From positions 1-64,000 of IMG/VR virus record IMGVR_UViG_3300045999_010033: 64,000 nt of DNA; one strand, 5' to 3'. A program made the position numbers and the translations under genes. This document shows positions 8,849 through 52,096 of this stretch, one piece after another; the first letter of the stretch is position 1; each line of letters begins with the position of its first letter. The notes below the pieces were generated by a model. The model was not told the DNA's origin, made no database searches, and worked only from the letters and a program-made list of their open reading frames with translations.

Positions 8849-9099
8849 TATATTCGGTATTTTGATAGTATATCACTCCAATATTGTCGGCCTTCGGGTG
8901 TGCTATTCCAAACGAATCCACGCTTCATAAAGACTTCAAAACTTCGACATTTACTTTGCAAAAAGAAAGAAATGGATCCGACATTATCAAGATTTTTTAA
9001 ATACTTAACCTGTACCGCATATGGTAATTTATTCAGATAATATAATCCGTTTTTCATTTTATATTCATTTTGCAGTCGGAGCGGGACTCGAACCCGCAA
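8848..9099 (-). CDS. FxWxxTPEGHxYW family paralog 7 (true start probably MKNGLYY)
   Basis: FVWNSTPEGRQYW; annotated start runs into the tRNA-like element. Confidence 0.8.
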   Translation of the reverse strand: MRVRVPLRLQNEYKMKNGLYYLNKLPYAVQVKYLKNLDNVGSISFFLQSKCRSFEVFMKRGFVWNSTPEGRQYWSDILSKYRI

Positions 9100-9152
9100 C
9101 GCTAAACCGTATAGGATGAGATGACCGTTTCCTCATTATAAGCTATCCGACC
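9073..9152 (-). ncRNA. tRNA-like RNA without a recognisable anticodon arm
   Basis: Acceptor GGTCGGA/TCCGACT, T-arm GCGGG-TTCGAGT-CCCGC; the middle does not fold as a D/anticodon cloverleaf. Confidence 0.6.
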
Positions 9153-9162
9153 GACCAGCCGA

Positions 9163-9606
9163 TTACTTCAGTAATCCGGCGATTGCTTTCACTTTATCCA
9201 ACTTACTCATTGAGCCGTTTTCGATTGTAGTGAGAGCCTGCCATACCTTAAATTCATTTTCATCGTATTCCGTTACACCGGCTTCATCCATCCAAGCGAT
9301 TACGGCGTTGGCCTCGTCGATTTGGGCTTGATGTTCGGCAATCTCCTTTTGGTAATCTTCCCTAGTGATACCTACTACTTTAGCGTCATATTCTTGGAGC
9401 CAATTACCCTGCCATAATCCATCAAGCGTCTCGGCCGTTAGTACCTTACCTTTAATGGTTTTAACACGATATTTTTCTCCGATGGTATAATTTGCAGATC
9501 CCTCATTTCCAGTTACTACGATAATATCTCCTACTTTTGGCTTCTTACTCATTTTTAATTTGATTTTTAAGTTGTATATAAATTGTTTAATCCGATTTCG
9601 TTTCAT
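9163..9606 (-). CDS. SH3-like + coiled-coil paralog A1
   Basis: KVGDIIVV..YTIGEKYRV...WMDEAGVTEYDENEFKVWQALT. Confidence 0.8.
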   Translation of the reverse strand: MKRNRIKQFIYNLKIKLKMSKKPKVGDIIVVTGNEGSANYTIGEKYRVKTIKGKVLTAETLDGLWQGNWLQEYDAKVVGITREDYQKEIAEHQAQIDEANAVIAWMDEAGVTEYDENEFKVWQALTTIENGSMSKLDKVKAIAGLLK

Positions 9607-9613
9607 AATTCGA

Positions 9614-10036
9614 TTATTTCAAGAGAGCGGCGATGGCCCTTACCTTGTCCATCTTACTCATTGATTCATTTTCAATTGTAGTAAGTGTCTGCCAAACCTT
9701 ATGTTCGTTTTCATCATACACATCCGTACCGGTCTCGTCCATCCAAGCAATAATGGATTGATTGTGCTCAATATCAGTTTTGAGTTTGCTAATCCTTCCG
9801 GTCAGCGTTTGGATTTCGGATTCGATTGCGGCTTTATCTACGGTGCCTGGATCACAATCTTTGTACTTCAGATTATTACCTTTCCATACTCCATCCAAGT
9901 CTCCGGCCATAAATGTGGTGGCGCCGGTATGGGCTAGGACTCGATACCTTTTACCAATAGTATAACTGTGTGAGTTTGAATTAGCCTTTACAAGTACAAT
10001 GTCTCCGACCTGAGGAAGTGCTTTTAACCTTGCCAT
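9614..10036 (-). CDS. SH3-like + coiled-coil paralog A2
   Basis: QVGDIVLV..YTIGKRYRV...WMDETGTDVYDENEHKVWQTLT. Confidence 0.8.
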   Translation of the reverse strand: MARLKALPQVGDIVLVKANSNSHSYTIGKRYRVLAHTGATTFMAGDLDGVWKGNNLKYKDCDPGTVDKAAIESEIQTLTGRISKLKTDIEHNQSIIAWMDETGTDVYDENEHKVWQTLTTIENESMSKMDKVRAIAALLK

Positions 10037-10088
10037 ATTTGTTTTGTTTTATTTATTTAAGTTTTTGTTTTTAATTATAAGAATAGAA

Positions 10089-10487
10089 TTAACCCTTAAT
10101 CATTTGAGCAATTCGTTTCACTTTGTCAATCTTGCTGATATTCTCATCTTCCATAGCCGTCAGCACCTGCCATACCTTAAATTCATCTTCATTGAACACA
10201 TCGGAGCCGGTCATCGACATCCACGCAAGCATACTATGCCTATCTTCAATGAGTGCCTGTGCTTCGGAAATATCCTTCAAAAGTTCATCTTTGGTCATCT
10301 CCCAAATCTCTACCTGCGAAAACTTCAACCATCCACTCTCTGTTCCCGGTACAGCTGCCAATTCAGCTTTCAGAGTATTATCCGACCTATCTATACGTGT
10401 AATACTATATTTTATATCTTTACGATATCCATCCACGGTTGCGATAACTCTAATACATGCTCCGATTTTAACTTGGTCTGCTTTCAT
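10089..10487 (-). CDS. SH3-like + coiled-coil paralog A3
   Basis: KIGACIRV...WMSMTGSDVFNEDEFKVWQVLT. Confidence 0.8.
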   Translation of the reverse strand: MKADQVKIGACIRVIATVDGYRKDIKYSITRIDRSDNTLKAELAAVPGTESGWLKFSQVEIWEMTKDELLKDISEAQALIEDRHSMLAWMSMTGSDVFNEDEFKVWQVLTAMEDENISKIDKVKRIAQMIKG

Positions 10488-10622
10488 TTTATTTGTTTTT
10501 TGTTTGTTTTTATTTATTAGTTTTGCTCCTTATTCTCTTACCCTTTTATTTCGGAGCTGGCCTGCTTATCCTCGCCCTTTCGGACTGATACGAGTTTCTC
10601 AAGGGCACAGGTAGTTTTATAT

Positions 10623-11210
10623 TTACTCACTATCCGAGTACATAACTTTAGATTCCTTACGGTCGGACTTCGGGCCCAATTCAACATCGGCCAATTCAGC
10701 GGATGCCATTATATCGGCAGTTCCCCGCACTACATCACGCATACCAACGGGAGCGTGTCCTTTGCCGGCGATTGCTTTCACTTCACTAACCAGCTTATCT
10801 GCTTTACGAATGAAGTCACGGGCGGTTTCATCTGAAATAAACATACGCGGTTTATCAACACCCGGTCCAGTCACTTCATACAATTCATAGAAGTCCTTAC
10901 CACCAATATCCGCCGGCAAGTTCAATTCACGAACTACCTTTGTGATTTTGTAACCACGCGGAAGGCGAGAACTTACTGCTTTGGCCGTCGGCTTCTTAAC
11001 CGCCGGCTTTTTAGTGGCCGGCTTTTTAGTAGCAGCCTTTTTAGTTGCCGGTTTCTTAGCCGTAGCATTTTTAGTGGCCGCCTTCTTAGCCGCCGGCTTG
11101 ACCGCCTTCTTCGTAGCAGCCTTTTTAGTGGCCGTCTTTTTGGCCGCAGGTTTGGTAGCCTTCTTTGTAGCGGGCTTTTTAGTAGTCGTTTTTTTCACTG
11201 CTTTACTCAT
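10623..11210 (-). CDS. histone H1-like Lys/Ala/Thr-rich protein with globular C-terminal domain
   Basis: ~80 aa of KKPAT/KKAAT repeats. Confidence 0.8.
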   Translation of the reverse strand: MSKAVKKTTTKKPATKKATKPAAKKTATKKAATKKAVKPAAKKAATKNATAKKPATKKAATKKPATKKPAVKKPTAKAVSSRLPRGYKITKVVRELNLPADIGGKDFYELYEVTGPGVDKPRMFISDETARDFIRKADKLVSEVKAIAGKGHAPVGMRDVVRGTADIMASAELADVELGPKSDRKESKVMYSDSE

Positions 11211-11227
11211 AGTAACTTTTTTATTTA

Positions 11228-11542
11228 TTAATCCATAGGAGATACCTTCGCTTCACCATCTAATGCTGCTTCATATCCTTCACGCCAAGAGATATCTTTT
11301 TCTTCCCAAATAGCATCAACCAATTCAATCATTTTCTCATCTTCAAGCTCCAATGAATAAAGCAAATCGGAAGTTTCTTTACTTACGTGCAGTATTCCAC
11401 CATCATCATCGGATTCGCCGGCACCATCGTTATATGCCTCATCCAATAGGGAATCAACGAGAATCATTACTTGTTCGGTTTCCTCACCAGTGAAACGTTG
11501 TCCAATAACCGTCTGCAATACATCGTACTTTTTACTATCCAT
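11228..11542 (-). CDS. acidic hypothetical protein with internal duplication
   Basis: LVDSLLDEAYNDG / LVDAIWEE..WREG. Confidence 0.6.
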   Translation of the reverse strand: MDSKKYDVLQTVIGQRFTGEETEQVMILVDSLLDEAYNDGAGESDDDGGILHVSKETSDLLYSLELEDEKMIELVDAIWEEKDISWREGYEAALDGEAKVSPMD

Positions 11543-12069
11543 TTTATTTGTTTTTATTTGTTTTCGTTTTTTCTGAAATCACCATACATTCCGACGAGTA
11601 TGATTGTCGGAATTATTATCACCCACCATTTCCAATTCATTACGGTGATGTTAGCAATGCTCATAGATGAGCCGAGCCATATGGACCATCCATACCTTTT
11701 AAGAAACTCTATCATTTATTTATTTTTTATTTCGTTATCAATATCTTCGAATGTAATGTCTTCATCCGCCGGCCGGAAGGTAGCAATCCATAACAGCCCC
11801 ATAAACACCGCTGGTAAAATTAGTTCACTCATTATTTTCTATTAATTCGGTTAGAGATAGCAATCAGTAAGAGGACGATTAGAAACAGAAGAAAGTTAGT
11901 CATATAGATTTATATTTGTTTTTATTAATCGGCCCAACCATCGTATTTGATGTGGGGAATTTCGGTAGCTTTCACTCTGCGAATCTTGCGGTTACGCATC
12001 TTTTTATACCACTTACCACTACGTTTAGTATTACCGTGTTTAGAAATTTGTTCAGCTTTTATTGCCATA

Positions 12070-12264
12070 TTATATTACGATTATTGTATCTTCAGCTTCA
12101 CTTTGTCCAAGCAGATAACCTGCTTTGAATCCTTTAACGAATGCCTCATAGGATATGATGCCATCATCTATTCGTTTGAATATCTCAAGCGCTTTCAGCT
12201 CTATGATATCATCACGCTTTGTGTTTCGTATGTACGTTTGTTTTTTTGATTTATCTTCACTCAT
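12070..12264 (-). CDS. hypothetical protein
   Basis: Packed ORF; AFVKGFKAGY motif. Confidence 0.55.
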   Translation of the reverse strand: MSEDKSKKQTYIRNTKRDDIIELKALEIFKRIDDGIISYEAFVKGFKAGYLLGQSEAEDTIIVI

Positions 12265-12283
12265 ATGTTTTTATTTTTATTTG

Positions 12284-12376
12284 TAGTCAGGACAGGATTC
12301 GAACCTGTACAAAGTTATTTACTATTACCTTTGCCAGCTCGGATGCTGGTGTGTCTACCTATTTCACCACCTGACC
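12284..12376 (-). ncRNA. tRNA-like RNA (Leu-type body, 6-nt non-anticodon loop)
   Basis: GGTCAGG/CCTGACT-A; D arm GTG..GGTAGA-CAC; CCAGC-ATCCGA-GCTGG; long variable arm; ACAGG-TTCGAAT-CCTGT. Confidence 0.8.
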
Positions 12377-12387
12377 GAACCATCCGA

Positions 12388-12765
12388 TTAGTTATCGGAG
12401 AAATCAATTCCACCGAGGATGCTATCCCCGTCGTTCATACGTGCAATCTTCTCTTTGGCATTCACACGCATTTGTTTCATAACTTCACGAAGTGACCCGC
12501 CATCTGTCATTTCATTAACACGTTCCCACGCGGCATCAATCTTCATTTGAAGAAACTCGCGAAGCGGTTTGTTTTGTGGTTCATCGTTGAGCTCCTCAAT
12601 GAAGTCCTCAAGTGATGCAACCGTTGCCATCCGAAGAGCGAGCGATTCCGTGCTATCCGGCGAATCGGCTGTAATAACGTTAGCGAGTACCATCGCCAGC
12701 TTTACACGTTGCTCATCCATTTCATTAATCAATCCCAGAATTCCACCAATGTTTTCGATATTCAT
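12388..12765 (-). CDS. helical hypothetical protein
   Basis: Packed ORF. Confidence 0.6.
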   Translation of the reverse strand: MNIENIGGILGLINEMDEQRVKLAMVLANVITADSPDSTESLALRMATVASLEDFIEELNDEPQNKPLREFLQMKIDAAWERVNEMTDGGSLREVMKQMRVNAKEKIARMNDGDSILGGIDFSDN

Positions 12766-12767
12766 AA

Positions 12768-13094: not shown

Positions 13095-13279
13095 CCTAAT
13101 TTGATTTGTTTAGCTATCCACATCTTCCGATGAATCTTTCCGAACTTTGAACGTTCCGGCATATGTTTCAATCGACGGAAGTAGTAGTGTTTTCTTTCGC
13201 CCGTGTCGTATCGGGCACCGTTCCAATATTTACTCATAGTTACCTCGCATAGAACGCTACCCATTCTGCTTGTTTCCAA
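13091..13279 (-). CDS. basic hypothetical protein
   Basis: Packed ORF. Confidence 0.5.
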   Translation of the reverse strand: METSRMGSVLCEVTMSKYWNGARYDTGERKHYYFRRLKHMPERSKFGKIHRKMWIAKQIKLG

Positions 13280-29918: not shown

Positions 29919-31145
29919 TTATTTTTCGTGTTTCAATAAAAAAGTATTTGATATTACTTTGAATGAGATAGTTCTATCTAAACTACGAATCACTACACCC
30001 TCCCTATCAAAGTTTGGATTAAGTACCGATTTAGCATCAGCGTAACTCAACAATTCACTCACATCATTCGGTAAGATAAAGTTTGTATCTAAAACCGGCA
30101 CAGTCTCCAACCCAAAGGTATGTTCCATCGTAGCCATAAACATCGGAAGGCCATAATAGGTTTGGTTATCAATATCAAAGATGTTAAAGAACCTTACGGT
30201 CTGACCTTTTATCTTATATGGATTACCCTGAATACCCTCACCGATTAACTCACCCTGAATGGAAAGGTTCTTACCATAACTCCTAAGTTTGTTTTCCAAG
30301 TCAAGCTCTCTAGCCACCTTCCAAAATGTGTTTTCCGTTTTAGGTCGTTCAATGCCATCATCACACATAACCATACCGGGTACGAATGGTTCAGGTTCAC
30401 TCAATTCCAAATTACGGCTACACACTCCAAACACACCATCTTTGTAATAGAACGTTGCTGAACTACCATCAAGCTTTTCCGTTACATAGAACTGATGCTT
30501 TGATTGTAATCTCCAGCCTTCATATTCTTTTGTTAAGTTTTGTACACGCTCTTCATCGGTCTTTCTAATGAATGATGGGAACAACCCTTTCACTTTGCCG
30601 GATAGTTCGGCCGGTATTGGTGGCTCATATTTAGTGATACCCAACCTTTCAGTTACATCTTCACCGTCTACTATGGTGATAAGTCCTTTATATAATGTAC
30701 TATCTAACATAGTAAGTGGTAACAACAAACCTTGTGAAACCTGTCCACGCAATCGAATCGTTTTCAATCTGAATCCCTCACTACCATCTTTCATTTTCTT
30801 ATATGAAGATTTACGAAGAAACTCAAACTCATCACAAATCGGTAAGAACGAATCAACTTCACAATAAACACAAAGGTCACCCGGCTTATACTCGCCCTTT
30901 TTAGTTACTACCTTCCATCCGCCAACAACGGCAACTTCGATAGCATCCGCACCATCAATCGGTTGGATATCGGTAATCGTTCTTATACTTGCTAACTTCC
31001 TATCGGTCATAATTACGGAATTTTGTTCGTTTACAAATCTATCATTTTCGGTGAATCCGGCTGAATCGTATTCCGGCACATCATCTTCACTCATTGCTTG
31101 TAAGGCCATATCTTGCCATTCTTTCATTTCATCTTTCATATCCAT
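29919..31145 (-). CDS. RNA ligase, DRB0094/Rnl5 family
   Basis: KLASI..IQPIDGADAIE, YCEVDSFLP, LRGQVSQGL, TEKLDGSS, QGELIG, REGVV, FKVISN. Confidence 0.9.
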   Translation of the reverse strand: MDMKDEMKEWQDMALQAMSEDDVPEYDSAGFTENDRFVNEQNSVIMTDRKLASIRTITDIQPIDGADAIEVAVVGGWKVVTKKGEYKPGDLCVYCEVDSFLPICDEFEFLRKSSYKKMKDGSEGFRLKTIRLRGQVSQGLLLPLTMLDSTLYKGLITIVDGEDVTERLGITKYEPPIPAELSGKVKGLFPSFIRKTDEERVQNLTKEYEGWRLQSKHQFYVTEKLDGSSATFYYKDGVFGVCSRNLELSEPEPFVPGMVMCDDGIERPKTENTFWKVARELDLENKLRSYGKNLSIQGELIGEGIQGNPYKIKGQTVRFFNIFDIDNQTYYGLPMFMATMEHTFGLETVPVLDTNFILPNDVSELLSYADAKSVLNPNFDREGVVIRSLDRTISFKVISNTFLLKHEK

Positions 31146-33005: not shown

Positions 33006-33503
33006 TTAAACGTTTTGTTCTAGCTCATCAATGTAATTATCCCAACGTTTCAATTCAGCCACTTTTTTTATTCTACAATTTTTCAAATAATTGTTTATGT
33101 ATCCGATAATGTTACCAGCTCCAATCGGATTGGCGGAATGAACATAAATATCTGGGATGGGAATACCAGTATCCATACTATATTTAACCAACCACTTTGC
33201 GCAATCGTATCCGGTCTTTTCAATTATGTTATCGTAATCAATTTTGTAATTATCTTTCACGTTTCTATAATATTCCAAAATAGCGGATTCACCCAAATCG
33301 TGGTCAAAAGAAATCCTTTCAATATTTTCCAAACCATACTGATGTACTGCCATACAAAATTCATCATAACTACGAACAACAATCCAATTTTGATCCATTG
33401 GTGTTCTCATATCATCAAGATATAACCAAAATGTTTTTTTCATATAACTGTTTTTATTTTTACATATGAAACTCCAACTCCGCAGTATCAAAGTTGTAGT
33501 CAA
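33006..33503 (-). CDS. cyclic-phosphate-processing receiver-like domain protein
   Basis: LYLDDMR.P, ISFDHDLG, TGYDCAKW, VHSANPIG. Confidence 0.8.
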   Translation of the reverse strand: MTTTLILRSWSFICKNKNSYMKKTFWLYLDDMRTPMDQNWIVVRSYDEFCMAVHQYGLENIERISFDHDLGESAILEYYRNVKDNYKIDYDNIIEKTGYDCAKWLVKYSMDTGIPIPDIYVHSANPIGAGNIIGYINNYLKNCRIKKVAELKRWDNYIDELEQNV

Positions 33504-34245
33504 AATTTATCGGAGGATTAACACATTCGTATCTGATATTAAGATTACTTGAATTGAACGTTTGGCAATCGTACCAATCTTTCAGTCCGATTACTTTGTG
33601 CCCCATGCCCTCATGAATATGTCCACAAAAATGTAAATGGGGTTTCACTTCACGCACTCTATGATAAAGATCGGCGCATCCAACATTTTCATTCGTGTTC
33701 AATGTTCGGTCGTTGTATCCATACATCGGAGTATGTGTTATGAGTATGTGAGTATCCATAGGAATCAAATTCCAATGTTCATTCATATCATATCCTCTAT
33801 CCGAATTAAATCCCCATCCACTTCCGAAGCTTGGTGAGTATGGAGAGCCCCATATGTTTATTCCTTCAATACAAACTGAACTATTTTCTAAATAGTGTAC
33901 ACCATTTTTCAGATTACCGAGTAATGTTTTTAACCAATGCGGCTTATCATGTTGAGCAAGTTTAACCCATTCAGTATTGTATCCATTGAATATGTGTCTA
34001 TCAATCCATTCCGACTTAACACGAAACTTTCTTTCACTATCGAACACAATGTCGTGATTACCGGCTATGAATACTTTGTATTTGTATGGTTGGTCGGATA
34101 ACCAACCGATGAAATCTTCTACTTCATCTTTTCTACCGATACTAGTGAAGTCGCCGGAATGAATAAGTATATCGCCACCGGGCAACGTCAACTCACGATG
34201 ATATGTGTGAGTATCGGATATTGCTGTTATGCGAAACTTTTTCAT
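33460..34245 (-). CDS. calcineurin-like metallophosphoesterase
   Basis: SDTH, HSGD, AGNHD, ITHTP, GHIHE. Confidence 0.9.
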   Translation of the reverse strand: MKKFRITAISDTHTYHRELTLPGGDILIHSGDFTSIGRKDEVEDFIGWLSDQPYKYKVFIAGNHDIVFDSERKFRVKSEWIDRHIFNGYNTEWVKLAQHDKPHWLKTLLGNLKNGVHYLENSSVCIEGINIWGSPYSPSFGSGWGFNSDRGYDMNEHWNLIPMDTHILITHTPMYGYNDRTLNTNENVGCADLYHRVREVKPHLHFCGHIHEGMGHKVIGLKDWYDCQTFNSSNLNIRYECVNPPINFDYNFDTAELEFHM

Positions 34246-43197: not shown

Positions 43198-43357
43198 CTG
43201 ACAGGGTTGGATTCGAACCAACAAACCGAGATTCAGTAACGAGCACATAGTGCTGCAGCATTGTGGTCAACCCATACTCATTACCTATTTCTATATCGGC
43301 GACTGCGAGACGAGCAGCTGTGTTTGCCAAGATATTACATCGTTTCACCACCTGTCA
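43198..43357 (-). ncRNA. 160-nt expanded tRNA-like RNA
   Basis: TGACAGG/CCTGTCA-G; enlarged D loop; GCTGC-TCGTCTC-GCAGT arm; ~75-nt branched arm; GTTGG-TTCGAAT-CCAAC. Confidence 0.8.
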
Positions 43358-43528: not shown

Positions 43529-43741
43529 AGTTTCCCCACCTTGAGATTACAGATGAGTAGTTATTTCGGTTTTCTATTTCTTAAAACCCGCGAGGCATCC
43601 CTCATTAAAACAGCCAACACTACTGGGAGAGATTGTGTCAGTCTCTTTATCCCACGATGTCTCACTCTAGCCGCAGACATTCTGCTAACCTATTGTTAAA
43701 TGAGTCTTAGGTCAAAGACTACTGAGTATCTCTTACTCATT
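43529..43741 (-). ncRNA. candidate ~210-nt structured RNA
   Basis: Serial hairpins (TGAGTA/TACTCA, AGTCTT/AAGACT, ATGTCT/AGACAT, TGGGA/TCCCA, GGTTTT/AAAACC) between two tRNAs. Confidence 0.55.
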
Positions 43742-43933: not shown

Positions 43934-44404
43934 TTATAATACTTTTTCTGATTTTAGTTTTGTTTCAAATTTGTCAAATCGGGAATCAATATAAGAACGA
44001 TTTTCATCAATTCTTTTATGAATTTCCGGCTCAACCTGATCATGAACATTTTTCTGAAATTCATCAATACGTTTATGGATTTCACCCGAAACTGAATCAA
44101 TATCGCGATGTACATCAGGTAGTATGTGTTCATACACATCCCTTTTAAATTCATTGAGTTCTCTATTTGTATTTTCAAACATTGAATGCGTGTTTGAATA
44201 CACATCATCGAATCTCTTAACGTGCTTACTTACCATTATATTTGCCCTCACGATGCCGATAACCATACCAATTAGTATGACTGTAGCTATCCCAAGAACA
44301 TAGGCAATATACATTTGTTCCATAGTTTGTTTTCTCCTATATGTCAAAGAACGATAATCGTGCCCCAGGCGGGGGTCGAACCCGCACTCGCTTTCAGCGA
44401 ACAA
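43934..44404 (-). CDS. membrane-anchored coiled-coil protein (true start likely MEQMYIAY, ~44322)
   Basis: TM plus HKRIDE repeats; annotated start lies inside the tRNA-Leu. Confidence 0.65.
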   Translation of the reverse strand: MFAESECGFDPRLGHDYRSLTYRRKQTMEQMYIAYVLGIATVILIGMVIGIVRANIMVSKHVKRFDDVYSNTHSMFENTNRELNEFKRDVYEHILPDVHRDIDSVSGEIHKRIDEFQKNVHDQVEPEIHKRIDENRSYIDSRFDKFETKLKSEKVL

Positions 44405-44471
44405 GATTAACGCCGCGACGTGTTGAAGCTTGCGTTAAGTCTTGCATGTCTACCTATTCCATCACCAGGGC
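44361..44471 (-). tRNA. tRNA-Leu(TAA) with 26-nt anticodon-loop insertion (44409-44434)
   Basis: CAAGA-CT-TAA-[CGCAAGCTTCAACACGTCGCGGCGTT]-AA-TCTTG; Leu-type body. Confidence 0.85.
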
Positions 44472-44526: not shown

Positions 44527-45594
44527 TTAATTATCCAAATCTTTCCGAAAAGGTTTTGCGTATTTAGGGCGAATACATTTCCATATAATAGAATCGTAAT
44601 CCCTCCCATCTAACATAGAAAATAATATTGATGCATGATTATAACGGATTGCTTTGATTGCAAACTCTTTTCTGCTCAAATTTTCACTACGAATGATTGA
44701 GAATATTTCCAAATAATCACGTTTAATATTTTCAAATCTAACTACCAAGTCTTTTACGGTATCCTTTACCCACGTATCAAATTCGTCCGGCACTCTTTCC
44801 AATAACTCATTCAAATCACCACCGGTCCGCAACAATTCCCAGATATCTACATTCGAAACATTGGTGATTATCTTATGAAGTCTTACATACTCTTCACCTT
44901 TGATTTTCATTCTCTTCCCACCTTTGAAACGTATTACATAACCTTCGGCATCATTTGAAATCATATCCTTCAACTTAGTGAAGTCAGTAACACCATTGTA
45001 CTTTCTAACAACTCTTACATCGGTAAAAAGTGCTACTGATTTAGTCAAAGTTTCAAATTCAATTTCGTCCAAAGTATCTCTATCATATGCACCCAACAAT
45101 ACCAAACCCTCAAATGGGTAGCGGCAGACTATCCGATTCTCATCATATATGATTTCAAAAAGGTAAGTCCAATTTTTTCTCAATCCAGTTGTAGGATAGT
45201 TTTTCAATATAGATAATCCCTTCAACATTTCAGTTGCCTTAACGGCTTGCTCTGAAACGAATGAACCTCTCGTTGCTACTATCCAATCTCCGTTATAGTA
45301 AAATGCAATTCCTAAAGAACCGTCCATCTTTTCAAAGACTTCAAATGATTCGTTTGGAATTTCACTATTGGATAATTCTTCCATATTGAAAAATTTTGGA
45401 AATGGTTTGGCTACCACAGTGCCTTCATTATCCAAAACCAATCCACGGCAATCCAATGTAACTGCATCCCACAATCGGTCGTATTGGCACGTTCTGCTGT
45501 AATTGTAGATTGATAAAGGTAACGTTGGATGGTCTTGCTTAACTATCAATCCTCGTCCGATATAATCGTTCAATATGTTTAATGGATATTTCAT
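44527..45594 (-). CDS. T4 Rnl1 (RnlA)-family RNA ligase
   Basis: YNY, CRGLVL, PFPKFFN, FEKMDGSLGI, FEII, EGYVI, KIKGEEY. Confidence 0.9.
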   Translation of the reverse strand: MKYPLNILNDYIGRGLIVKQDHPTLPLSIYNYSRTCQYDRLWDAVTLDCRGLVLDNEGTVVAKPFPKFFNMEELSNSEIPNESFEVFEKMDGSLGIAFYYNGDWIVATRGSFVSEQAVKATEMLKGLSILKNYPTTGLRKNWTYLFEIIYDENRIVCRYPFEGLVLLGAYDRDTLDEIEFETLTKSVALFTDVRVVRKYNGVTDFTKLKDMISNDAEGYVIRFKGGKRMKIKGEEYVRLHKIITNVSNVDIWELLRTGGDLNELLERVPDEFDTWVKDTVKDLVVRFENIKRDYLEIFSIIRSENLSRKEFAIKAIRYNHASILFSMLDGRDYDSIIWKCIRPKYAKPFRKDLDN

Positions 45595-45995
45595 AATTTT
45601 ACACTAAAACGTTTCCGCATTTTTTCCAAAGTCTCATCCGGTACACCATGTACGGATTTATTACCATGTCTATTTTCTACAATCAATGATACAACGGTGT
45701 ATCCATAGCTCTTTGCTAACTTCAAATATGGTTCAAGTTCCCTTTCGGTAGTTGCCGTATTGGATACTACAATCTCTTGTCCATACTGAGTCGTTTCACT
45801 CATTTGCATCAATTCCTCAACACGCTTTTGACAATCCAAATGGGCTTCATGCAATTTCGAAGCGTCAAAATTGTAGTTACCGTTTGAATCGTAAAAGTAT
45901 TGGTCTGCCTCAAACACATTATTTGAAAACATATATTTAGCAAATGAGCTTTTACCACTACCGGGTAAACCACGTAATATGATTAATGTTTTCAT
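45591..45995 (-). CDS. P-loop polynucleotide kinase-like protein
   Basis: LRGLPGSGKS, EAD, VSNT, HGVP. Confidence 0.85.
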   Translation of the reverse strand: MKTLIILRGLPGSGKSSFAKYMFSNNVFEADQYFYDSNGNYNFDASKLHEAHLDCQKRVEELMQMSETTQYGQEIVVSNTATTERELEPYLKLAKSYGYTVVSLIVENRHGNKSVHGVPDETLEKMRKRFSVKL

Positions 45996-46348: not shown

Positions 46349-46357
46349 TTGTGAAAT

Positions 46358-47449: not shown

Positions 47450-48112
47450 TTATTTATATTTTTCTACTGATTCATGATGGTCGAAACTCATTAGGCTTTT
47501 GATTGGTTGCCTTCTCATACGGGTAGCAATTTCACTTACCGAAATCGGCCTCAAACCATTACCGTCCACACCAACATCCATCATTTTACCTGGTCCAATT
47601 CTACTAGCCATAGGTAAATGAACGTGTCCATGCAAATGAATTGCACCATTGGCCATTTGGTCCCAACTGGCAATAGGAAAGTGCATCAGTACAAACAATT
47701 CACTACTAACAAGCGGAGTACCCACATTCCGTTTTACAGTTAAATGTAAGTATTTGTTTACGGAACTGAAATGTGATTGACATCCTTCTTTGTTTCTCTC
47801 AATATGATGGTCGTGGTTTCCGGTGATGATGTGAATGTTCTTACATACGATACGATTACGGAAGGCTTCGATTTGCTCAAACCCACCAAAACTCCAATCG
47901 CCCAAATGAAAAAGAATATCATCTTGTCCGACTTCGGCGTTGATGTTATTCACCAATGTATCGTTCATTTCATCCAATGATTTGAAATCTCTACACGTCA
48001 CCGGGTCTTTCCATTGTGTTGTAGTGGAACAGATGTTGGCGTGATTGTAGTGTGTATCAGATGTGAACCACAATTGTTGACCTTTATTTAAACTTATTTT
48101 CATTTGTTTCAT
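47450..48112 (-). CDS. calcineurin-like phosphoesterase
   Basis: TSDTHYNH, HLGD, GNHD, MHFP, HGHVH. Confidence 0.9.
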   Translation of the reverse strand: MKQMKISLNKGQQLWFTSDTHYNHANICSTTTQWKDPVTCRDFKSLDEMNDTLVNNINAEVGQDDILFHLGDWSFGGFEQIEAFRNRIVCKNIHIITGNHDHHIERNKEGCQSHFSSVNKYLHLTVKRNVGTPLVSSELFVLMHFPIASWDQMANGAIHLHGHVHLPMASRIGPGKMMDVGVDGNGLRPISVSEIATRMRRQPIKSLMSFDHHESVEKYK

Positions 48113-48296
48113 CTTTTAATACAATGATTTCTTTTACTTTCACCGGCCAAATAGGCATCCTATCAATCGTTACCTGCATATGCCCATGTAACGGATTCAC
48201 TCCGCACGATTGGCAGATACCAGTGATTCTTTGACCGGGCCACTTTGGATGGAGTACACTAATACGTTTACCAACCAAATTCAAATCGTTTCTCAT
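48084..48296 (-). CDS. hypothetical protein
   Basis: Packed ORF. Confidence 0.5.
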   Translation of the reverse strand: MRNDLNLVGKRISVLHPKWPGQRITGICQSCGVNPLHGHMQVTIDRMPIWPVKVKEIIVLKDETNENKFK

Positions 48297-48306
48297 AATA
48301 ATGTGT

Positions 48307-48960
48307 TTATCGCTCTTTAAGTTCTAATGAATCTAAGCTGAAGGGGCAGTACAGCAAAGTTGGATTCTTTTTCTGAATATCAACATTAGGATACTTCTTT
48401 TTGAACTCTATAACATCAAATCTATTAGTAATAAGATGAAATCCATTTTTAGTTGGAATTTCCGCAATACATTTATATCCTTCCGGTCTTAATACGTTGA
48501 TAAATGCCCGGATATCTTCTCTAACAATTTCATCCTTTGTATCAATATCGATAATCCAACGCTTCTCATAAGTTTTCAGTTGCCCAACAACCGAATCAAA
48601 TAAGTTGTTTTGAACGAACTGACCATCTTTGAGTCTTTGTGCCAAAGCCATCATCATATCCAATGAAACATCTTTATGATTTTGTTTCTGAATATGGATG
48701 TAGGCACGTGCTTTAAACATCTCACAAAGTTGGATTATTTCATCATAACGTTTTTCCAAATATTGAATACTGGAAACGCAATATGTTTTTATTGTACGAA
48801 CCGATTGGTGATTATCCCTTTCACCTTCGGGCTGGTCCTTCTTTCTTTTGAAGATATACAACATATAAAAGTCACCCTCGTTATCGAAGTTCAGCAAAGG
48901 TTTGATTAATTCGATATTGTTTATCATACTATACGATTTTTTAGACATAGTGGGTCTCAT
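48307..48960 (-). CDS. possible AEP/primase-like fold protein
   Basis: WIIDID and TKNGFH resemble AEP motifs I/II (inference). Confidence 0.5.
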   Translation of the reverse strand: MRPTMSKKSYSMINNIELIKPLLNFDNEGDFYMLYIFKRKKDQPEGERDNHQSVRTIKTYCVSSIQYLEKRYDEIIQLCEMFKARAYIHIQKQNHKDVSLDMMMALAQRLKDGQFVQNNLFDSVVGQLKTYEKRWIIDIDTKDEIVREDIRAFINVLRPEGYKCIAEIPTKNGFHLITNRFDVIEFKKKYPNVDIQKKNPTLLYCPFSLDSLELKER

Positions 48961-48989
48961 TGTGTATTACTACACAAAGTTAGGGCATT
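48935..48989. repeat. 55-bp promoter/leader duplication, copy 2
   Basis: 53/55 identical to 32495-32549. Confidence 0.95.
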
Positions 48990-49136
48990 CTGTGCTAATA
49001 AACAAACCTATTTGTTGAATTTTTTCTAAATTTTTGAGGACTTTGTTAGAAAAAATCTAATAGTCATTGATTATCAACGAGTTATAACTCATTGATATTC
49101 TATGAATTATAACGTCTATTGATAATCAATGACTTA
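48960..49136 (-). promoter_or_regulatory. P5: promoter + hairpin + two IHF-consensus sites
   Basis: TAACTTTG 48975-82, TTTG 20 nt upstream; TTGTGTA-GTAA-TACACAA; sites at 49072 and 49124. Confidence 0.85.
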
Positions 49137-49145
49137 CGTGGAGAA

Positions 49146-49604
49146 TTATCCCAAATAATCGAATTTTTTGATTATCTTTTTTAAGATTGCCGAATATCCA
49201 CTTGACTGGGAATATATTTTATCTAAATAGGATAGATACTCGGTTCGATTGGATATACTACGTTTTTGTATAAAACGGTCTTGCCACATTTTGTAATCCT
49301 TAACAGAATCTTTCCAACTGAAAAATGTAGCGTATCCACGATTAGATCCAGTGGCCAACGTCTCCCTCACTTTCGGATACTTCATTCCGAATAGATTGTT
49401 ATTTAATTTGAAGACTGTAGATTTAAAATGCCCACTTTCTAAAACAGCTTGTGCAAATACTACTTCGGGATATTTAATCCCATTTGCTATCAATTCACTC
49501 CACAATAATTCATAATTAGGAGGAGTATTCCGCGAGTTGTTCGCAGCGAAGCTCGTAAACAATAAAGGTAAGACGAGCAAACAAACAGTGATGATTTTTT
49601 TCAT
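49146..49604 (-). CDS. glucosaminidase (FlgJ/GH73-like) with signal peptide
   Basis: AQAVLESG, NNLFGMK, YATF..WKDSV.DY. Confidence 0.85.
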   Translation of the reverse strand: MKKIITVCLLVLPLLFTSFAANNSRNTPPNYELLWSELIANGIKYPEVVFAQAVLESGHFKSTVFKLNNNLFGMKYPKVRETLATGSNRGYATFFSWKDSVKDYKMWQDRFIQKRSISNRTEYLSYLDKIYSQSSGYSAILKKIIKKFDYLG

Positions 49605-49656
49605 GCGCTTTTTGTTTTGATTAAAAATATGCCATCATTGTGACATTTATATTGAG

Positions 49657-49731
49657 TTGGGTGTGCCAGATTCGAACTGGCGATTTCTTGCTCCCAAAGC
49701 AAGCGCGATAACCGGACTACGCTAACACCCA
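49657..49731 (-). tRNA. tRNA-Pro(TGG)
   Basis: CTTGC-TTTGGGA-GCAAG. Confidence 0.9.
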
Positions 49732-49780
49732 GTGTTTAAGTATTAAATATAAGTATTTTTTTGGATTAAACCAAAACTGA

Positions 49781-50515
49781 TTACCATTGTTTTTGAGATG
49801 TAACCAGGAATTGGTGAGCCGGTTGACCCGTGTTGGGGCTAACCCACGATAACCAAGATCCAGTTATTTGTTGAGGAGCCGGGCCTATTACTGATTTATA
49901 TGGAATACGTGCAATCAACGGCCCTTTAATTGTCAAACTACCCGTTGACCAAATGTATAATACAGAATTAGCAGGTAGTATATCTATTGGTGCTTTCCTT
50001 ATTAGGAATACACGCGTATCAGTTCCGGCAGTTGGGAAGCGGTTCATCTGTCCAATTCTTTCACCAACTGCGGTAGAGGCGGTTGCATTAGATGCCGTTG
50101 TATAATATAATGCGTAACTTTGTGTTACTGCACTTCTGGCTACAAGCGAATATCCAATAATATAATTGCCTTGTGGTATTACCGATGCTGTCATAGCAAA
50201 CGCAAATGGTGCACCCCAACTCGTACTACCAGTAGTAGGACCGGTTATTTGTGCATCGGTGTGACCATACTTCACCATACCATTCAATGCCGAAAATACT
50301 GCATTATACGATGCCGAGTTCACTTGAACAAAATCACCAACACTTGCCGAATCATAACTTGCGGTATTTGCCGACGAAAGTGCTGCACGAATTGCATCAG
50401 ATACTACCGATTGTGTTGCAGCCGCCCCTACGTTCATCACCATTCTGCCGATTCCGCTTTGATTATTCATTGATAATCCGCCGCCGGCTCCAGTATTTGA
50501 AAACTTTATGGGCAT
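49781..50515 (-). CDS. Ser/Thr/Ala-rich beta-type protein, possibly virion-associated
   Basis: Composition only. Confidence 0.55.
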   Translation of the reverse strand: MPIKFSNTGAGGGLSMNNQSGIGRMVMNVGAAATQSVVSDAIRAALSSANTASYDSASVGDFVQVNSASYNAVFSALNGMVKYGHTDAQITGPTTGSTSWGAPFAFAMTASVIPQGNYIIGYSLVARSAVTQSYALYYTTASNATASTAVGERIGQMNRFPTAGTDTRVFLIRKAPIDILPANSVLYIWSTGSLTIKGPLIARIPYKSVIGPAPQQITGSWLSWVSPNTGQPAHQFLVTSQKQW

Positions 50516-50556
50516 CTCTTTTCCTTTATAATAGGTATAATGGAATTGAGAAAAAA

Positions 50557-50634
50557 TGGTAGTCCCATCGTGATTCGAACACGAAACCTACGCTTTAGAA
50601 GAGCGTCGCTCTAATCCTGTTGAGCTATGGGACC
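50557..50634 (-). tRNA. tRNA-Arg(TCT)
   Basis: ACGCT-CTTCTAA-AGCGT; CCA encoded. Confidence 0.93.
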
Positions 50635-50653
50635 ATAAAAGATAATTATCTTT

Positions 50654-50727
50654 TGGCGGTTCGTAGGGGTTACGCTCCCCTGCCTTCGCAGTGACAGTGC
50701 GATATTCTACTATTATACTAACGAACC
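50654..50727 (-). tRNA. tRNA-Asp(GTC), T-loop AGCGTAA
   Basis: TCGCA-CTGTCAC-TGCGA; G73, CCA encoded. Confidence 0.87.
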
Positions 50728-50734
50728 AAAACTG

Positions 50735-50817
50735 AGCCGAGAGCCGGATTCGAACCGGCGTGTCCTTGCGGATCCTGATTACAAGTCAGGTGCAATCGGC
50801 CACTATGCGACCTCGGC
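50735..50817 (-). tRNA. tRNA-Thr(TGT) with long variable arm
   Basis: CCTGA-CTTGTAA-TCAGG; variable arm TCC-GCAA-GGA. Confidence 0.85.
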
Positions 50818-51021
50818 TTATATTATCTTACAATACTATATACAACCGTCAACATCCAACCATCTCCATTGCTGTTGGTATGTACTGATTCAATCTTTAT
50901 TGTGTTTGGTCCAAATTCTGCAACCCATGCATCAAATTGCCGATTCAATTCATCACCAGCAAAGGTGCCGCGTTTTCCACTTGTAAATACTTTAATCATA
51001 TACTTTTATTTTTATTTTCTG

Positions 51022-51153
51022 CGTCAGGGTGGGGAATCGAACCCCACACTCTCATACCAGGAGCTATGCCTAGAGTTACATCACGTATAGTGTTTTCACA
51101 CATCCCCTATATTATGCGACGGCCTTAACGTTTACCCATTACGTCACCTGACT
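51022..51153 (-). ncRNA. ~130-nt expanded tRNA-like RNA
   Basis: AGTCAGG/CCTGACG; D arm ACGT-AATGGGTAA-ACGT; ~80-nt insert; GTGGGG-TTCGATT-CCCCAC. Confidence 0.78.
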
Positions 51154-51343
51154 ACCACTTCTATTTAATTTTGAATAGCCTATCGAAGAATCGTTTTAGA
51201 GTCGGTTTTAGTTTTCGATTTCTTTTTAGCTCTTCTTGATACGCTATTACTTCCAATACCTCATCAAACCTAATTGGAGTTCCTCTACGGACATCATCGG
51301 ATAACTTTTCTAATCTTTCGTTTTTCATTTTTTTATTGTTCAG

Positions 51344-51439
51344 TAGTCAGGACACGAATCGAATCTGTATTTAGGATTGTTTAATCGGGCTTCATACCGT
51401 ACCTACCTTTCGGTGCGTCTACCGTTCCGCCACCTGACT
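51344..51439 (-). ncRNA. tRNA-like RNA with degraded T stem
   Basis: AGTCAGG/CCTGACT-A; GCG-GAACGGTAGA-CGC; ACCG-11 nt-CGGT arm. Confidence 0.72.
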
Positions 51440-51446
51440 ATTTTAT

Positions 51447-51701
51447 TTATATCCACTTAATACGATTTTCTGTGTCCATCCATTGTTGGAATTGATTTTT
51501 GTTAACCAAACACGTTCTCTTTTCTTCACCAAACATATTATTCATTGTAATTGATGTATCAGGGACAGAAATCAAACACTCAACAATCAAATGATCCCCT
51601 ATCTCACCATGTTCATCATCATAATCTTTTTCTTTCCATCCTAAAATTTCCAAAACGTATTTATTATCTATTCTAATGAATTTTAAAAGACTTTTTTCCA
51701 T
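51447..51701 (-). CDS. hypothetical protein
   Basis: Packed ORF. Confidence 0.55.
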   Translation of the reverse strand: MEKSLLKFIRIDNKYVLEILGWKEKDYDDEHGEIGDHLIVECLISVPDTSITMNNMFGEEKRTCLVNKNQFQQWMDTENRIKWI

Positions 51702-51702
51702 G

Positions 51703-52011
51703 TTATTTAGTTTTTGCGATTTCTACATTCAAAGCATTATTGAGCAATGAATACAATTTTGATGTAAAATCTCTCGAAAAGATTGACATCCAATTCATCT
51801 CTGTTTCCAACTCCTCAATAGATTCACGAATACTATCTTGATATCCTTTATGGTTAGTCACAATCCACAATGCAAGATTATTAATTCTTACTTTAAGTGA
51901 CTCGGATAAACATCCGTTATTTTGCATCATACAAAAAACTTGGTCTGCCCATTCATTACCACCAGTATCAAACAACTTGTTTTTGTCAGTGTATTTTTTC
52001 ATAATAATCAA
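51703..52011 (-). CDS. hypothetical protein
   Basis: Packed ORF. Confidence 0.5.
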   Translation of the reverse strand: MIIMKKYTDKNKLFDTGGNEWADQVFCMMQNNGCLSESLKVRINNLALWIVTNHKGYQDSIRESIEELETEMNWMSIFSRDFTSKLYSLLNNALNVEIAKTK

Positions 52012-52018
52012 TTTTTAG

Positions 52019-52096
52019 TAGTCAGGACAGGATTCGAACCTGCATGGTCACTCCTTTGTGTACACCGCGAGCTGCGTTACCATTCGCCACCTGACT
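52019..52096 (-). ncRNA. tRNA-like RNA without a canonical anticodon loop
   Basis: AGTCAGG/CCTGACT-A; GCG-AATGGTAA-CGC; GCAGG-TTCGAAT-CCTGT. Confidence 0.78.

What the first reader, a model, noticed from the sequence alone, without database searches (positions are those of the whole stretch)
9073..52096. Family of six tRNA-shaped RNAs that keep the tRNA elbow but swap the anticodon domain for variable cargo
Seen: elements at 9073-9152, 12284-12376, 43198-43357, 51022-51153, 51344-51439 and 52019-52096 share an acceptor stem that no true tRNA here uses (xGTCAGG/CCTGACx, variants GTCGGA and GACAGG). All have a TTCGA T loop, and five have a Leu-like D arm. Three share a near-identical 3' ~25 nt (+ strand TAGTCAGGACAGGATTCGAACCTG). 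None has a canonical 7-nt U33/purine-37 anticodon loop. The middle varies from ~30 to ~100 nt and is structured; the 160-nt member has a 10-bp helix GTAATGAGTA/TGCTCGTTAC. Base-paired arms are retained while the middle diverges, which argues against simple decay. Inference: either (a) decoys for host tRNA-sensing or anticodon-nuclease defences, or (b) natural tRNA scaffolds that use RNase P/RNase Z processing to release and stabilise small cargo RNAs. This is the best candidate here for an undescribed system.
Basis: partly seen in the sequence, partly recalled or inferred. Interest (0 to 1): 0.88.

Follow-up and report, generated by a model that had tools for sequence, protein, structure and literature searches.

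The report
Phage tRNA-framed RNAs with swapped middles
A large uncultured phage, and hundreds of related phage contigs, encode RNAs that keep a tRNA's acceptor, D and T arms but replace the anticodon region with varied, sometimes highly conserved inserts, so they look like non-decoding RNAs that use the tRNA shape as a processing and stability frame.

Summary
All six elements are tRNA-shaped genes on the minus strand, and none has a decoding-competent anticodon loop. They are not one family. E2, E5, E6 and a diverged E4 sit on a tRNA-Leu-derived chassis (AGTCAGG acceptor, Leu-type D loop, ACAGG T stem, discriminator A). I found 182 distinct copies of it in 120 viral contigs, up to 7 or more per contig, with middles of about 20-130 nt. 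E3 is a separate RNA of about 157 nt, present once in each of 61 contigs; 28 of its 41 predicted pairs covary and two loops are invariant. E1 belongs to a third class. Family members share the end signals of the genuine tRNAs: C after the discriminator in 98%, U at -1 in 82%. Cargo is conserved across unrelated flanks for E1, E3 and E5; the E2, E4 and E6 cargos are unique to this contig. No Rfam family, host tRNA mimicry, antisense target or paper accounts for them. Best reading: tRNA-chassis non-coding RNAs matured by tRNA enzymes. Their function is unknown. Decoy and operon-punctuation roles remain open.

The parts
12284..12376 (-). E2: core-chassis member, 93 nt. GGTCAGG acceptor, Leu-type D arm, 5-bp stem with a 6-nt loop AUCCGA, 5-bp extra arm with a 14-nt loop, ACAGG T arm, discriminator A.
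   Evidence: R1 66.7 bits. Rfam tRNA 44 bits. ARAGORN calls 'tRNA-??? (cc)'. Fold. Cargo z = -2.9. Cargo 22-mer unique to this contig.
52019..52096 (-). E6: core-chassis member, 78 nt, AGTCAGG acceptor, short 30-nt cargo with no canonical anticodon loop.
   Evidence: R1 60.2 bits. Rfam tRNA 39.8 bits in the relaxed run only. Cargo 22-mer unique to this contig.
51344..51439 (-). E5: core-chassis member, 96 nt. Its cargo belongs to a near-invariant class found in 11 contigs. The T stem of this copy is damaged.
   Evidence: R1 55.6 bits. Homologs with unrelated flanks. T stem ACAGA/CGTGT read from the sequence.
51022..51153 (-). E4: diverged chassis member, 132 nt. GTCAGG acceptor 6/7 with a one-base register shift, GGGG/CCCC T stem, discriminator G, 84-nt cargo.
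   Evidence: R1 34.5 bits. ARAGORN frame. Cargo z = +0.5. Cargo 22-mer unique to this contig.
43198..43357 (-). E3: member of a separate conserved RNA class of about 157 nt. tRNA frame with U1-A72 and discriminator G, a hairpin inserted in the D loop, invariant loop UCGUCUC on a covarying 5-bp stem, and an extra arm of about 75 nt with invariant UGGGUUGACCAC.
   Evidence: 61 viral contigs, one copy each. 41 distinct full elements. Alignment A1; 28 of 41 pairs show compensatory changes. No Rfam hit. Embedded between type-II tRNAs.
9073..9152 (-). E1: 80-nt member of a third class (TAATGAG...GGTTGC). GGTCGGA/TCCGACT acceptor, GCGGG T stem, discriminator G. It lacks the internal hairpin of about 45 nt seen in its 121-nt relatives.
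   Evidence: R1 31.7 bits. Rfam tRNA 25.9 bits, below gathering. Relatives L003, L050 and L085 show compensatory changes in two helices.
44361..44471 (-).
   Evidence: Scanner hit. Fold. Alignment with intact orthologs in L225, L243, L230 and L217. R1 37.4 bits.

Best explanation
The elements are genes for non-decoding, tRNA-framed RNAs. They are transcribed with the phage's tRNA operons or with neighbouring genes. Like tRNAs, they are cut at the 5' end by RNase P, trimmed at the 3' end to N73-C74 and completed to CCA. They then persist as stable L-shaped RNAs in which the anticodon and variable region is replaced by a class-specific module. The tRNA frame supplies processing, folding and nuclease resistance. 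The module is the working part and binds a class-specific partner (protein or RNA) that is still unknown. The core chassis arose from a phage tRNA-Leu and keeps the features bacterial LeuRS is known to read (A73, Leu-type D loop, no need for the anticodon), so these RNAs may also be leucylated. Shown here: the architecture, its wide conservation, stem covariation, loss of a decoding loop, tRNA-type end signals, co-orientation with neighbours, and conserved or covarying cargo for E1, E3 and E5. Inferred: actual processing, stability, charging, and that the module rather than the frame carries the function.
For: 1) Frame is real and selected. 182 distinct copies in 120 viral contigs. In loci not chosen by acceptor sequence, 99.2% of frame cells pair, 14 of 15 pairs show double changes, and 0 of 500 shuffles reach the covariation score. 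2) Non-decoding. Of 127 core members, only 11 have a 7-nt first loop and only 4 have U33/R37, three of which are genuine Lys-UUU genes. ARAGORN calls only 52 of 182, with scattered anticodons that include A34 types. 3) tRNA-type ends. C follows the discriminator in 98% and U is at -1 in 82% of 153 members; all 17 genuine tRNAs read in the window also have C74. 4) Cargo under selection. E3-type: 28 of 41 pairs covary and two loops are invariant in 30 sequences. E5-type: near-invariant in 11 contigs with at least 5 unrelated flanks. E1-type and other clusters show compensatory changes. 5) Leu origin. The genuine tRNA-Leu genes are the best non-family hits of R1, and Leu(UAA) is the commonest ARAGORN call among chassis-like sequences. 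6) Phage-borne, not a host tRNA copy. 7) Dense mixing with genuine tRNAs in RNA-gene islands, always on the neighbours' strand. 8) Tested precedent: T4 rnaC, an annotated stable RNA in the T4 tRNA cluster, has the same kind of frame.
Against: There are no expression, end-mapping or charging data. Cargo stability is only modestly above shuffles (mean z = -0.78; E1, E4, E5 and E6 near zero). A pure scaffold needs only tRNA shape, yet the top half is conserved at sequence level (AGTCAGG in 14 of 52 unbiased hits) while the genuine tRNA-Leu genes of the same phages drift. That points to an extra constraint this model does not explain. E5's T stem and E4's acceptor are imperfect. No partner protein recurs next to the elements.
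Confidence: 0.45

Rival explanations
1. Frame-is-the-function decoys. The RNAs bait or sponge host enzymes that dock on the tRNA top half or elbow (tRNA nucleases, 3'-end-modifying toxins). The lack of an anticodon loop keeps them out of translation and leaves nothing to cleave. The middle is free to vary.
For: The phage invests heavily in tRNA defence: about 27 tRNAs, a tmRNA, two RNA ligases, a kinase, phosphoesterases, HAD_SAK_2 and cyclic-phosphate-processing domains. The top half is sequence-invariant and the middles are hypervariable. There are several copies per genome.
Against: There is no anticodon-loop mimicry, and the best-known anticodon nucleases read that loop (my knowledge). The chassis is not a copy of a host tRNA: only 6 of 120 genome hits had a full frame, and all 6 were MAG contigs. 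Near-invariant or covarying cargos are unexpected if the middle is irrelevant.
Confidence: 0.2
2. tRNA punctuation. The elements are processing signals that let RNase P and 3' nucleases cut polycistronic transcripts into separate mRNAs or tRNAs and cap their ends. The excised tRNA-like piece has no role of its own.
For: Always co-oriented with neighbours. They lie between small ORFs in the window (E6, two ORFs, E5, ORF, E4, ORF). They lie between TerS and TerL in L041, L069 and L099, and 28 nt upstream of TerL in L038. They have tRNA-type end signals. Many cargos are unstructured and unique.
Against: Dense arrays of elements and tRNAs occur with no ORFs between them (L015). Cargo classes are conserved across unrelated flanks and covary. 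Sequence-level invariance of the chassis is not needed for RNase P recognition.
Confidence: 0.12
3. Decaying pseudo-tRNAs: neutral relics of duplicated tRNA-Leu genes.
For: E5's T stem and E4's acceptor are imperfect. E2, E4 and E6 cargos are unique. Such sequences are usually dismissed as tRNAs of undetermined isotype.
Against: Frames stay 99% paired with many compensatory changes. The chassis recurs near-identically in many unrelated contigs. End signals are kept. Cargo classes are conserved.
Confidence: 0.08
4. Intron-containing tRNAs that are spliced into working tRNAs, like the 'enigmatic introns' reported for Lak megaphage tRNAs.
For: E7 is exactly this shape: an otherwise intact tRNA-Leu(UAA) with a 26-nt insert. 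An RNA heal-and-seal kit is encoded nearby. Devoto et al. reported phage tRNA introns.
Against: For E1-E6, no single excision restores a canonical anticodon arm; ARAGORN's intron mode gives arbitrary, mutually unrelated anticodons. Core members lack U33/R37 loops.
Confidence: 0.05
5. DNA-level elements: recombination or attachment sites, or tRNA-derived mobile repeats whose conserved ends are recognised at the DNA level and which shuffle the sequence between or beside them.
For: The ends are invariant and the interior variable. There are several copies per genome in different contexts. Identical frames of about 25 nt could support recombination.
Against: Strict co-orientation with neighbouring genes. 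No target-site duplication in the flank logos. RNA-type compensatory changes occur in stems of both frame and cargo. No integrase or transposase recurs nearby.
Confidence: 0.05

Closest known systems
Phage T4 rnaC (species 1 RNA), a stable RNA encoded at the end of the T4 tRNA cluster
   Same: Phage-encoded, inside a tRNA operon, 139 nt. It has a canonical T arm and an acceptor-like 3' strand. Model R1 scores it 22.6 bits, level with genuine T4 tRNAs. It does not decode. To my knowledge its function is still unknown.
   Different: No sequence relationship to the AGTCAGG chassis. It is single-copy and is not a family of many modules on one frame. T4 rnaD lacks the frame.
Engineered 'tRNA scaffold' for recombinant RNA expression (Ponchon and Dardel design; my knowledge)
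   Same: The same architecture: acceptor, D and T arms are kept, and the RNA of interest replaces the anticodon region so that cellular tRNA enzymes process and stabilise it.
   Different: It is man-made. Here the design occurs naturally, in hundreds of variants, and the cargo often also replaces the variable arm or expands the D loop.
tmRNA tRNA-like domain
   Same: An acceptor/T-arm top half joined to a large non-tRNA middle, without an anticodon. The phage also encodes a real tmRNA at 57661-57994.
   Different: tmRNA has the G3-U70 alanine identity, a reduced D arm, pseudoknots and a tag ORF. The elements have U3-A70, a full D arm and no Rfam tmRNA match.
tRNAs with 'enigmatic introns' in Lak megaphages (Devoto et al., 10.1101/356790)
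   Same: Oversized tRNA-model hits of unclear isotype in very large phage genomes. E7 fits that description.
   Different: Those were read as interrupted but otherwise canonical tRNAs. E1-E6 cannot be restored to canonical tRNAs by one excision.
Murid herpesvirus 68 tRNA-miRNA chimeras and the MALAT1 mascRNA (my knowledge)
   Same: A tRNA-like fold is used to recruit RNase P or RNase Z for maturation of a non-tRNA product; the tRNA-like part is not used for decoding.
   Different: In those cases the cargo lies outside the tRNA-like unit and is released from it. Here it is embedded in the tRNA body. The hosts are eukaryotic.
Bacterial Y-RNA-like YrlA
   Same: A non-coding RNA with a tRNA-mimicking D/T elbow, sometimes phage-borne (my knowledge).
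   Different: In YrlA the 5' and 3' ends form a Ro-binding stem and the tRNA-like module is internal. Rfam YrlA gives no match at any element; its only weak hit overlaps the tmRNA and tRNA-Met.

Membership tests
Canonical tRNA (Rfam RF00005) | 7-bp acceptor stem, T arm with a TTCRA loop, D arm with GG | tested here: met
   All six have the frame. E5's T stem is 3/5 and E4's acceptor is 6/7.
Canonical tRNA (Rfam RF00005) | 5-bp anticodon stem with a 7-nt loop, U33 and purine 37 | tested here: not met
   None of E1-E6 has it. Only 4 of 127 core members elsewhere do.
Canonical tRNA (Rfam RF00005) | Score at or above the Rfam gathering threshold (29 bits) | tested here: inconclusive
   E2 44 and E6 39.8 bits pass. 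E1 25.9 fails. E3, E4 and E5 get no hit.
tmRNA | tRNA-like domain with G3-U70, a tag reading frame, pseudoknots, Rfam RF00023 match | tested here: not met
   Position 3-70 is U-A. There is no RF00023 hit at any element.
tRNA interrupted by a group I intron | Group I catalytic core in the anticodon loop | tested here: not met
   No Intron_gpI hit in the window at E up to 5. The inserts, 26-100 nt, are too short.
Protein-spliced (archaeal/eukaryal type) intron tRNA | One excision restores a canonical anticodon arm; intron at 37/38 in a bulge-helix-bulge | tested here: not met
   E1-E6 cannot be restored. E7 can be, but its insert is at 36/37 in a continuous helix without the two bulges.
YrlA / bacterial Y RNA | Terminal Ro-binding stem with an internal tRNA-like module; Rfam RF02553 match | tested here: not met
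   No RF02553 hit at any element. The ends form an acceptor stem instead.
T4 rnaC-type stable RNAs of phage tRNA clusters | Encoded in a phage tRNA operon, with a tRNA-like acceptor/T frame and an expanded non-decoding middle | tested here: met
   Architecture is shared. This is a loose class defined by description, and there is no sequence homology.
T4 rnaC-type stable RNAs of phage tRNA clusters | Accumulates as a discrete stable RNA in infected cells | not testable with these tools
   No transcript data for this uncultured phage.
Leucine-accepting tRNA (LeuRS substrate) | A73 plus Leu-type D-loop/tertiary layout; anticodon not required (E. coli rules, my knowledge) | tested here: inconclusive
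   A73 in 89%, U8, A14, A15 and G18G19 conserved in the core chassis. E1, E3 and E4 have G73. Charging itself is not testable here.

The most novel reading that the evidence does not exclude
The core family is a natural modular RNA platform. One sequence-invariant tRNA-Leu-derived top half is read by a single common factor, for example LeuRS/EF-Tu, a phage protein, or the co-encoded GOLLD RNA cage. Hundreds of interchangeable middle modules supply target specificity and diversify in an arms race with the host. The same islands would also hold the first bacteriophage tRNA spliced by proteins rather than by a ribozyme: in E7, the two insert junctions are offset by 2 bp with 3' overhangs, as RNase III would cut, which would leave ends that the adjacent Rnl1-type ligase could join.
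Probability: 0.15. Interest if true: 0.9.

Novelty: new variant of a known kind. Interest (0 to 1): 0.72.

Why it matters
Large phages are known to carry many tRNA-model hits of undetermined isotype, which are usually ignored or called pseudogenes. This work shows that a substantial part of them are selected, non-decoding RNAs built on a shared tRNA chassis, and that at least one class (E3-type, about 157 nt, 61 or more phages) is as well supported by covariation as accepted structured RNA families. If the frame acts as a natural tRNA scaffold, phages arrived at the design that RNA engineers use for stable RNA expression. The cargos would then be a library of uncharacterised phage effector RNAs sitting next to GOLLD RNA, tmRNA and RNA-repair genes. 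It also gives annotators a concrete rule for telling these RNAs from tRNAs, and gives experimenters defined targets for end mapping, charging and partner capture.

Tried and rejected
1. ARAGORN intron mode on E1-E6 gives a different, arbitrary anticodon for each, so I rejected it as evidence for introns.
2. Rnl1-E7 adjacency as conserved synteny: absent in 79 related loci.
3. Closest cultured phage: no DNA relative, and Rnl1 is at most 39% identical to cultured phages.
4. Known RNA families in the cargos: none in the window or in nine copy-rich loci.
5. Antisense targets of the cargos in the window's transcripts are no better than shuffles. Complements of the invariant E3 loops occur only at E3 itself.
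6. Mimicry of a host tRNA: the chassis 16-mer gives mostly chance hits in genomes. Only 6 of 120 loci have a complete frame, and all 6 are MAG contigs.
8. A dedicated partner protein: the commonest neighbour is the large terminase, in only 15 of 120 loci and at variable distance.
9. The small ORFs beside E4-E6 have no PHROG family.
10. Exact 22-mers of the E2, E4 and E6 cargos occur only in this contig.
11. No CCA-adding enzyme, aminoacyl-tRNA synthetase or peptidyl-tRNA hydrolase is found in the window.
12. Six literature searches found no description of the family.
13. I did not supply a hand-written structure string for the covariance model. The RNAalifold consensus was used instead and gave the intended 15 frame pairs.

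Full report
WHAT THE WINDOW IS. The window is the first 64 kb of a 221-kb uncultured viral contig, IMGVR_UViG_3300045999_010033, and window coordinates equal contig coordinates. All genes lie on the minus strand. ARAGORN and Rfam find 24-26 tRNAs, a tmRNA (57661-57994) and a GOLLD RNA (55991-56405). Three further weak tRNAs appear only with covariance models: Asp-GUC at 50657-50727, Asn-GUU at 55629-55700 and a second CAU at 57080-57151. The region also encodes an RNA heal-and-seal kit: an Rnl1-type ligase (44527-45594), an adjacent P-loop kinase (45591-45995), metallophosphoesterases (47450-48112, 33460-34245), a HAD_SAK_2 domain protein (53359-53880), a cyclic-phosphate-processing receiver domain (33006-33503) and a second RNA ligase (29919-31145). 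No cultured phage is close.

THE OBSERVATION. All six elements are present as described, on the minus strand. Each has an acceptor stem, a TTCGA-type T loop and, apart from E1, a recognisable D arm with GG. None has a 7-nt U33/R37 loop. No genuine tRNA in the window uses a GTCAGG-type acceptor. A covariance model built only from relatives in other contigs (R1) finds all six in the window at E between 5e-14 and 2e-5, with nothing comparable on the empty plus strand. Two details need correcting. E5's T stem keeps only 3 of 5 pairs. E4's acceptor is 6/7 with a one-base register shift.

THE FAMILY OUTSIDE THE WINDOW. From these I extracted 182 distinct elements of 65-290 nt. They share a chassis: AGTCAGG, TG, a Leu-type D arm (GCGGAATGGTAGACGC or close), a variable middle, ACAGG-TTCGAAT-CCTGT, CCTGACT and discriminator A. 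The search fixed only the 3' acceptor strand, so the conservation of the D arm and T stem is a real result. In loci fetched for unrelated reasons (the Rnl1 protein, or the E3 motif), R1 again finds the exact AGTCAGG acceptor in 14 of 52 hits from many contigs. The genuine tRNA-Leu genes of the same phages show ordinary drift with covariation, for example GCCCTGG, GCCCCGG, GCCTTGG and ACCTGGA. Across those 52 hits, 99.2% of frame cells are paired, 14 of 15 pairs show double changes and no shuffle reaches the covariation score. The chassis 16-mer occurs in bacterial genome records mostly by chance. Only 6 of 120 loci contain a full element. All 6 are MAG contigs, and 3 are binned as Bacteroidota. 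The family is therefore phage-borne and is not a copy of a host tRNA.

THE SIX ARE NOT ONE FAMILY. R1 scores E2, E6 and E5 at 56-67 bits, above the genuine tRNA-Leu genes (41-42 bits). E4, E3 and E1 score 32-35 bits, which is the level of ordinary tRNAs.
- E3 belongs to its own class. Its two invariant motifs occur together in 61 viral contigs, once per contig, giving 41 distinct full elements of 155-168 nt. In an alignment of 30 sequences, RNAalifold predicts 41 pairs, of which 28 keep pairing through changes on both sides. The loop UCGUCUC and the core UAUGGGUUGACCAC never vary. A palindromic hairpin inserted in the D loop changes sequence freely. E3-type usually lies among type-II tRNAs: tRNA-Leu(UAA) follows it in 12 of the 16 cases where a downstream tRNA is called, often after 6-11 nt.
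- E1 matches a third class (L003, L050, L085 and shorter relatives), with compensatory changes in a closing helix and in a D-like hairpin. It lacks their internal hairpin of about 45 nt.
- E5's cargo is near-invariant in 11 contigs with at least five unrelated flanks. One copy (L500) has a compensatory acceptor variant, AGTCCTG/CAGGACT. Most copies have an intact T arm, unlike the window's copy.
- For E2, E4 and E6 I found no cargo homolog, either in about 3 Mb of fetched loci or as exact 22-mers in IMG/VR.

A SEVENTH ELEMENT. My scanner found 44361-44471. It aligns end to end with intact tRNA-Leu(UAA) genes of related phages and differs by a precise 26-nt insert between nucleotides 36 and 37. 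The window has Leu-UAG and Leu-CAA genes but no other Leu-UAA gene, and UUA is 21% of Leu codons. The insert pairs with the anticodon to extend the stem. The two junctions are offset by 2 bp with 3' overhangs. That is the geometry RNase III leaves, and its products (3'-OH, 5'-phosphate) are what an ATP-dependent RNA ligase joins; the ligase gene is the next gene upstream. This last step is my inference from the fold, not a result.

WHAT THE ELEMENTS ARE NOT.
- They are not decoders. Of 127 core members, 11 have a 7-nt first loop and 4 have U33/R37; three of those four are genuine Lys-UUU genes built on the same top half.
- They are not known RNA families. Rfam sees only 'tRNA' with large insertions, or nothing at all.
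- They are not antisense to this window's transcripts.
- They are not reliably thermodynamically structured: mean cargo z is -0.78, and only E2 (and E7) stand out in the window.
- They are not tied to one neighbouring protein. The commonest neighbour is the large terminase, in 15 of 120 loci.

PROCESSING SIGNALS. In 153 core members the base after the discriminator is C in 98%, followed by A/U-rich sequence, and position -1 is U in 82%. All 17 genuine tRNAs read in the window, and all seven elements, likewise encode N73-C74 but not the full CCA. U at -1 is the preferred context for bacterial RNase P (my knowledge). The elements are always on the strand of their neighbours. In copy-rich loci they alternate with genuine tRNAs with little room for ORFs. 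This is the main basis for saying they are matured as tRNAs.

MECHANISM. I commit, at 0.45, to tRNA-chassis non-coding RNAs. The frame recruits tRNA maturation and gives a stable L shape. The inserted module is the functional part. The core chassis, derived from tRNA-Leu, keeps A73 and the Leu-type D loop and so may be leucylated, because bacterial LeuRS does not read the anticodon (my knowledge). One observation is left unexplained: the sequence-level invariance of the top half, which a mere scaffold does not need. It suggests either a common factor that reads it or frequent recombination through it. The rivals are decoys for enzymes that bind the tRNA top half (0.20), operon punctuation (0.12), decaying pseudogenes (0.08), spliced intron-bearing tRNAs (0.05 for E1-E6) and DNA-level repeats (0.05).

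COMPARISON WITH WHAT IS KNOWN. The nearest tested precedent is T4 rnaC, annotated as a small stable RNA at the end of the T4 tRNA cluster. It has a canonical T arm and scores 22.6 bits with R1, like genuine T4 tRNAs; rnaD does not. The architecture is that of the engineered tRNA scaffold. The Lak megaphage paper reported oversized tRNAs with 'enigmatic introns', and E7 fits that description. Papers on GOLLD and ROOL note their position near phage tRNA islands and speculate that the cages hold tRNAs. None of the papers I could search describes this family. I file it as a new variant of a known kind: tRNA-like non-coding RNAs.

LIMITS. The sample was seeded with one acceptor sequence. R1 E-values are rough. 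There are no expression data. Cargo function is supported for E1, E3 and E5 only.

Noticed in passing
window 44361-44471 (-): tRNA-Leu(UAA) gene with a precise 26-nt insert between nucleotides 36 and 37, directly downstream of the Rnl1-type ligase gene. Intact orthologs exist in L225, L243, L230 and L217. The junctions are offset by 2 bp with 3' overhangs, an RNase III-like geometry (my reading of the fold).
   Followed up: partly
window 52097-52239 (-): Conserved non-coding RNA immediately upstream of E6, with 24 distinct copies in the fetched loci. A helix GAUUGG/CCAAUC encloses a variable insert of 0-90 nt, followed by an invariant tail with a covarying hairpin ending CUUUCCUAAAU. It is often followed within 3-5 nt by a tRNA or a family member. 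No Rfam match.
   Followed up: partly
window 43529-43741 (-): 213-nt spacer between tRNA-Gly(GCC) and tRNA-Gly(UCC). It is 84% identical to L243:5917-6126 and 81% to L074, has stops in all frames and folds into several conserved hairpins. It is probably another unannotated RNA of these tRNA islands.
   Followed up: partly
window 29919-31145, 33006-34245, 44527-45995, 47450-48112, 53359-53880 (-): Extensive RNA repair toolkit: two RNA ligases, a P-loop kinase, two metallophosphoesterases, and HAD_SAK_2 and cyclic-phosphate-processing receiver domains. This implies strong pressure from host RNA- or tRNA-cleaving defences.
   Followed up: partly
window 50734-50817 (-): A tRNA with anticodon UGU (Thr) but an 83-nt type-II body with a long extra arm and a Tyr/Leu-like acceptor and D arm. 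That is an unusual combination for a Thr tRNA.
   Followed up: no
window 50657-50727, 55629-55700, 57080-57151 (-): Three tRNAs missed by ARAGORN: Asp-GUC and Asn-GUU with degenerate T loops, and a weak CAU tRNA-like sequence directly upstream of the GOLLD 5' region.
   Followed up: partly
window 55991-57079 (-): The GOLLD RNA has its conserved 3' domain at 55991-56405. Its variable 5' region appears to extend to about 57079, judged by homology to L053, L230, L195, L192 and L052. It is flanked by tRNAs on both sides.
   Followed up: partly
L041:13265-13387, L069:816-925, L099:2752-2861, L038:410-491: In smaller phage contigs a single chassis element lies inside the packaging module: between the small and large terminase genes, or 28 nt upstream of the large one.
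   Followed up: partly
L010 (+, ends 3388), L022 (-), L055 (-): Genuine-looking tRNA-Lys(UUU) genes of about 71 nt carry the same AGTCAGG acceptor and ACAGG-type T stem as the non-decoding family. The constant unit is therefore the acceptor/T top half rather than the whole Leu-like frame.
   Followed up: partly
L109, L052, L102, L004 (cargo cluster): A cargo class shares the motif CACCUCCCCAAGGUUGAG, which contains the anti-Shine-Dalgarno-like string CCUCC.
   Followed up: no
L014:7609-8193 (-): A group I intron hit (97.8 bits) abuts a tmRNA hit in a contig that also carries three chassis elements.
   Followed up: no
L021:4124-4186 (+): A freshwater-1 RNA motif hit at 70.1 bits, just under its gathering score of 72, inside a tRNA and tRNA-like array.
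   Followed up: no
window 9153-9175 and 12377-12400 (-): E1 and E2 share similar 5' leaders (TAATCGGnTGGTyC just upstream of +1). A TGGT motif also precedes E4 and E6.
   Followed up: no
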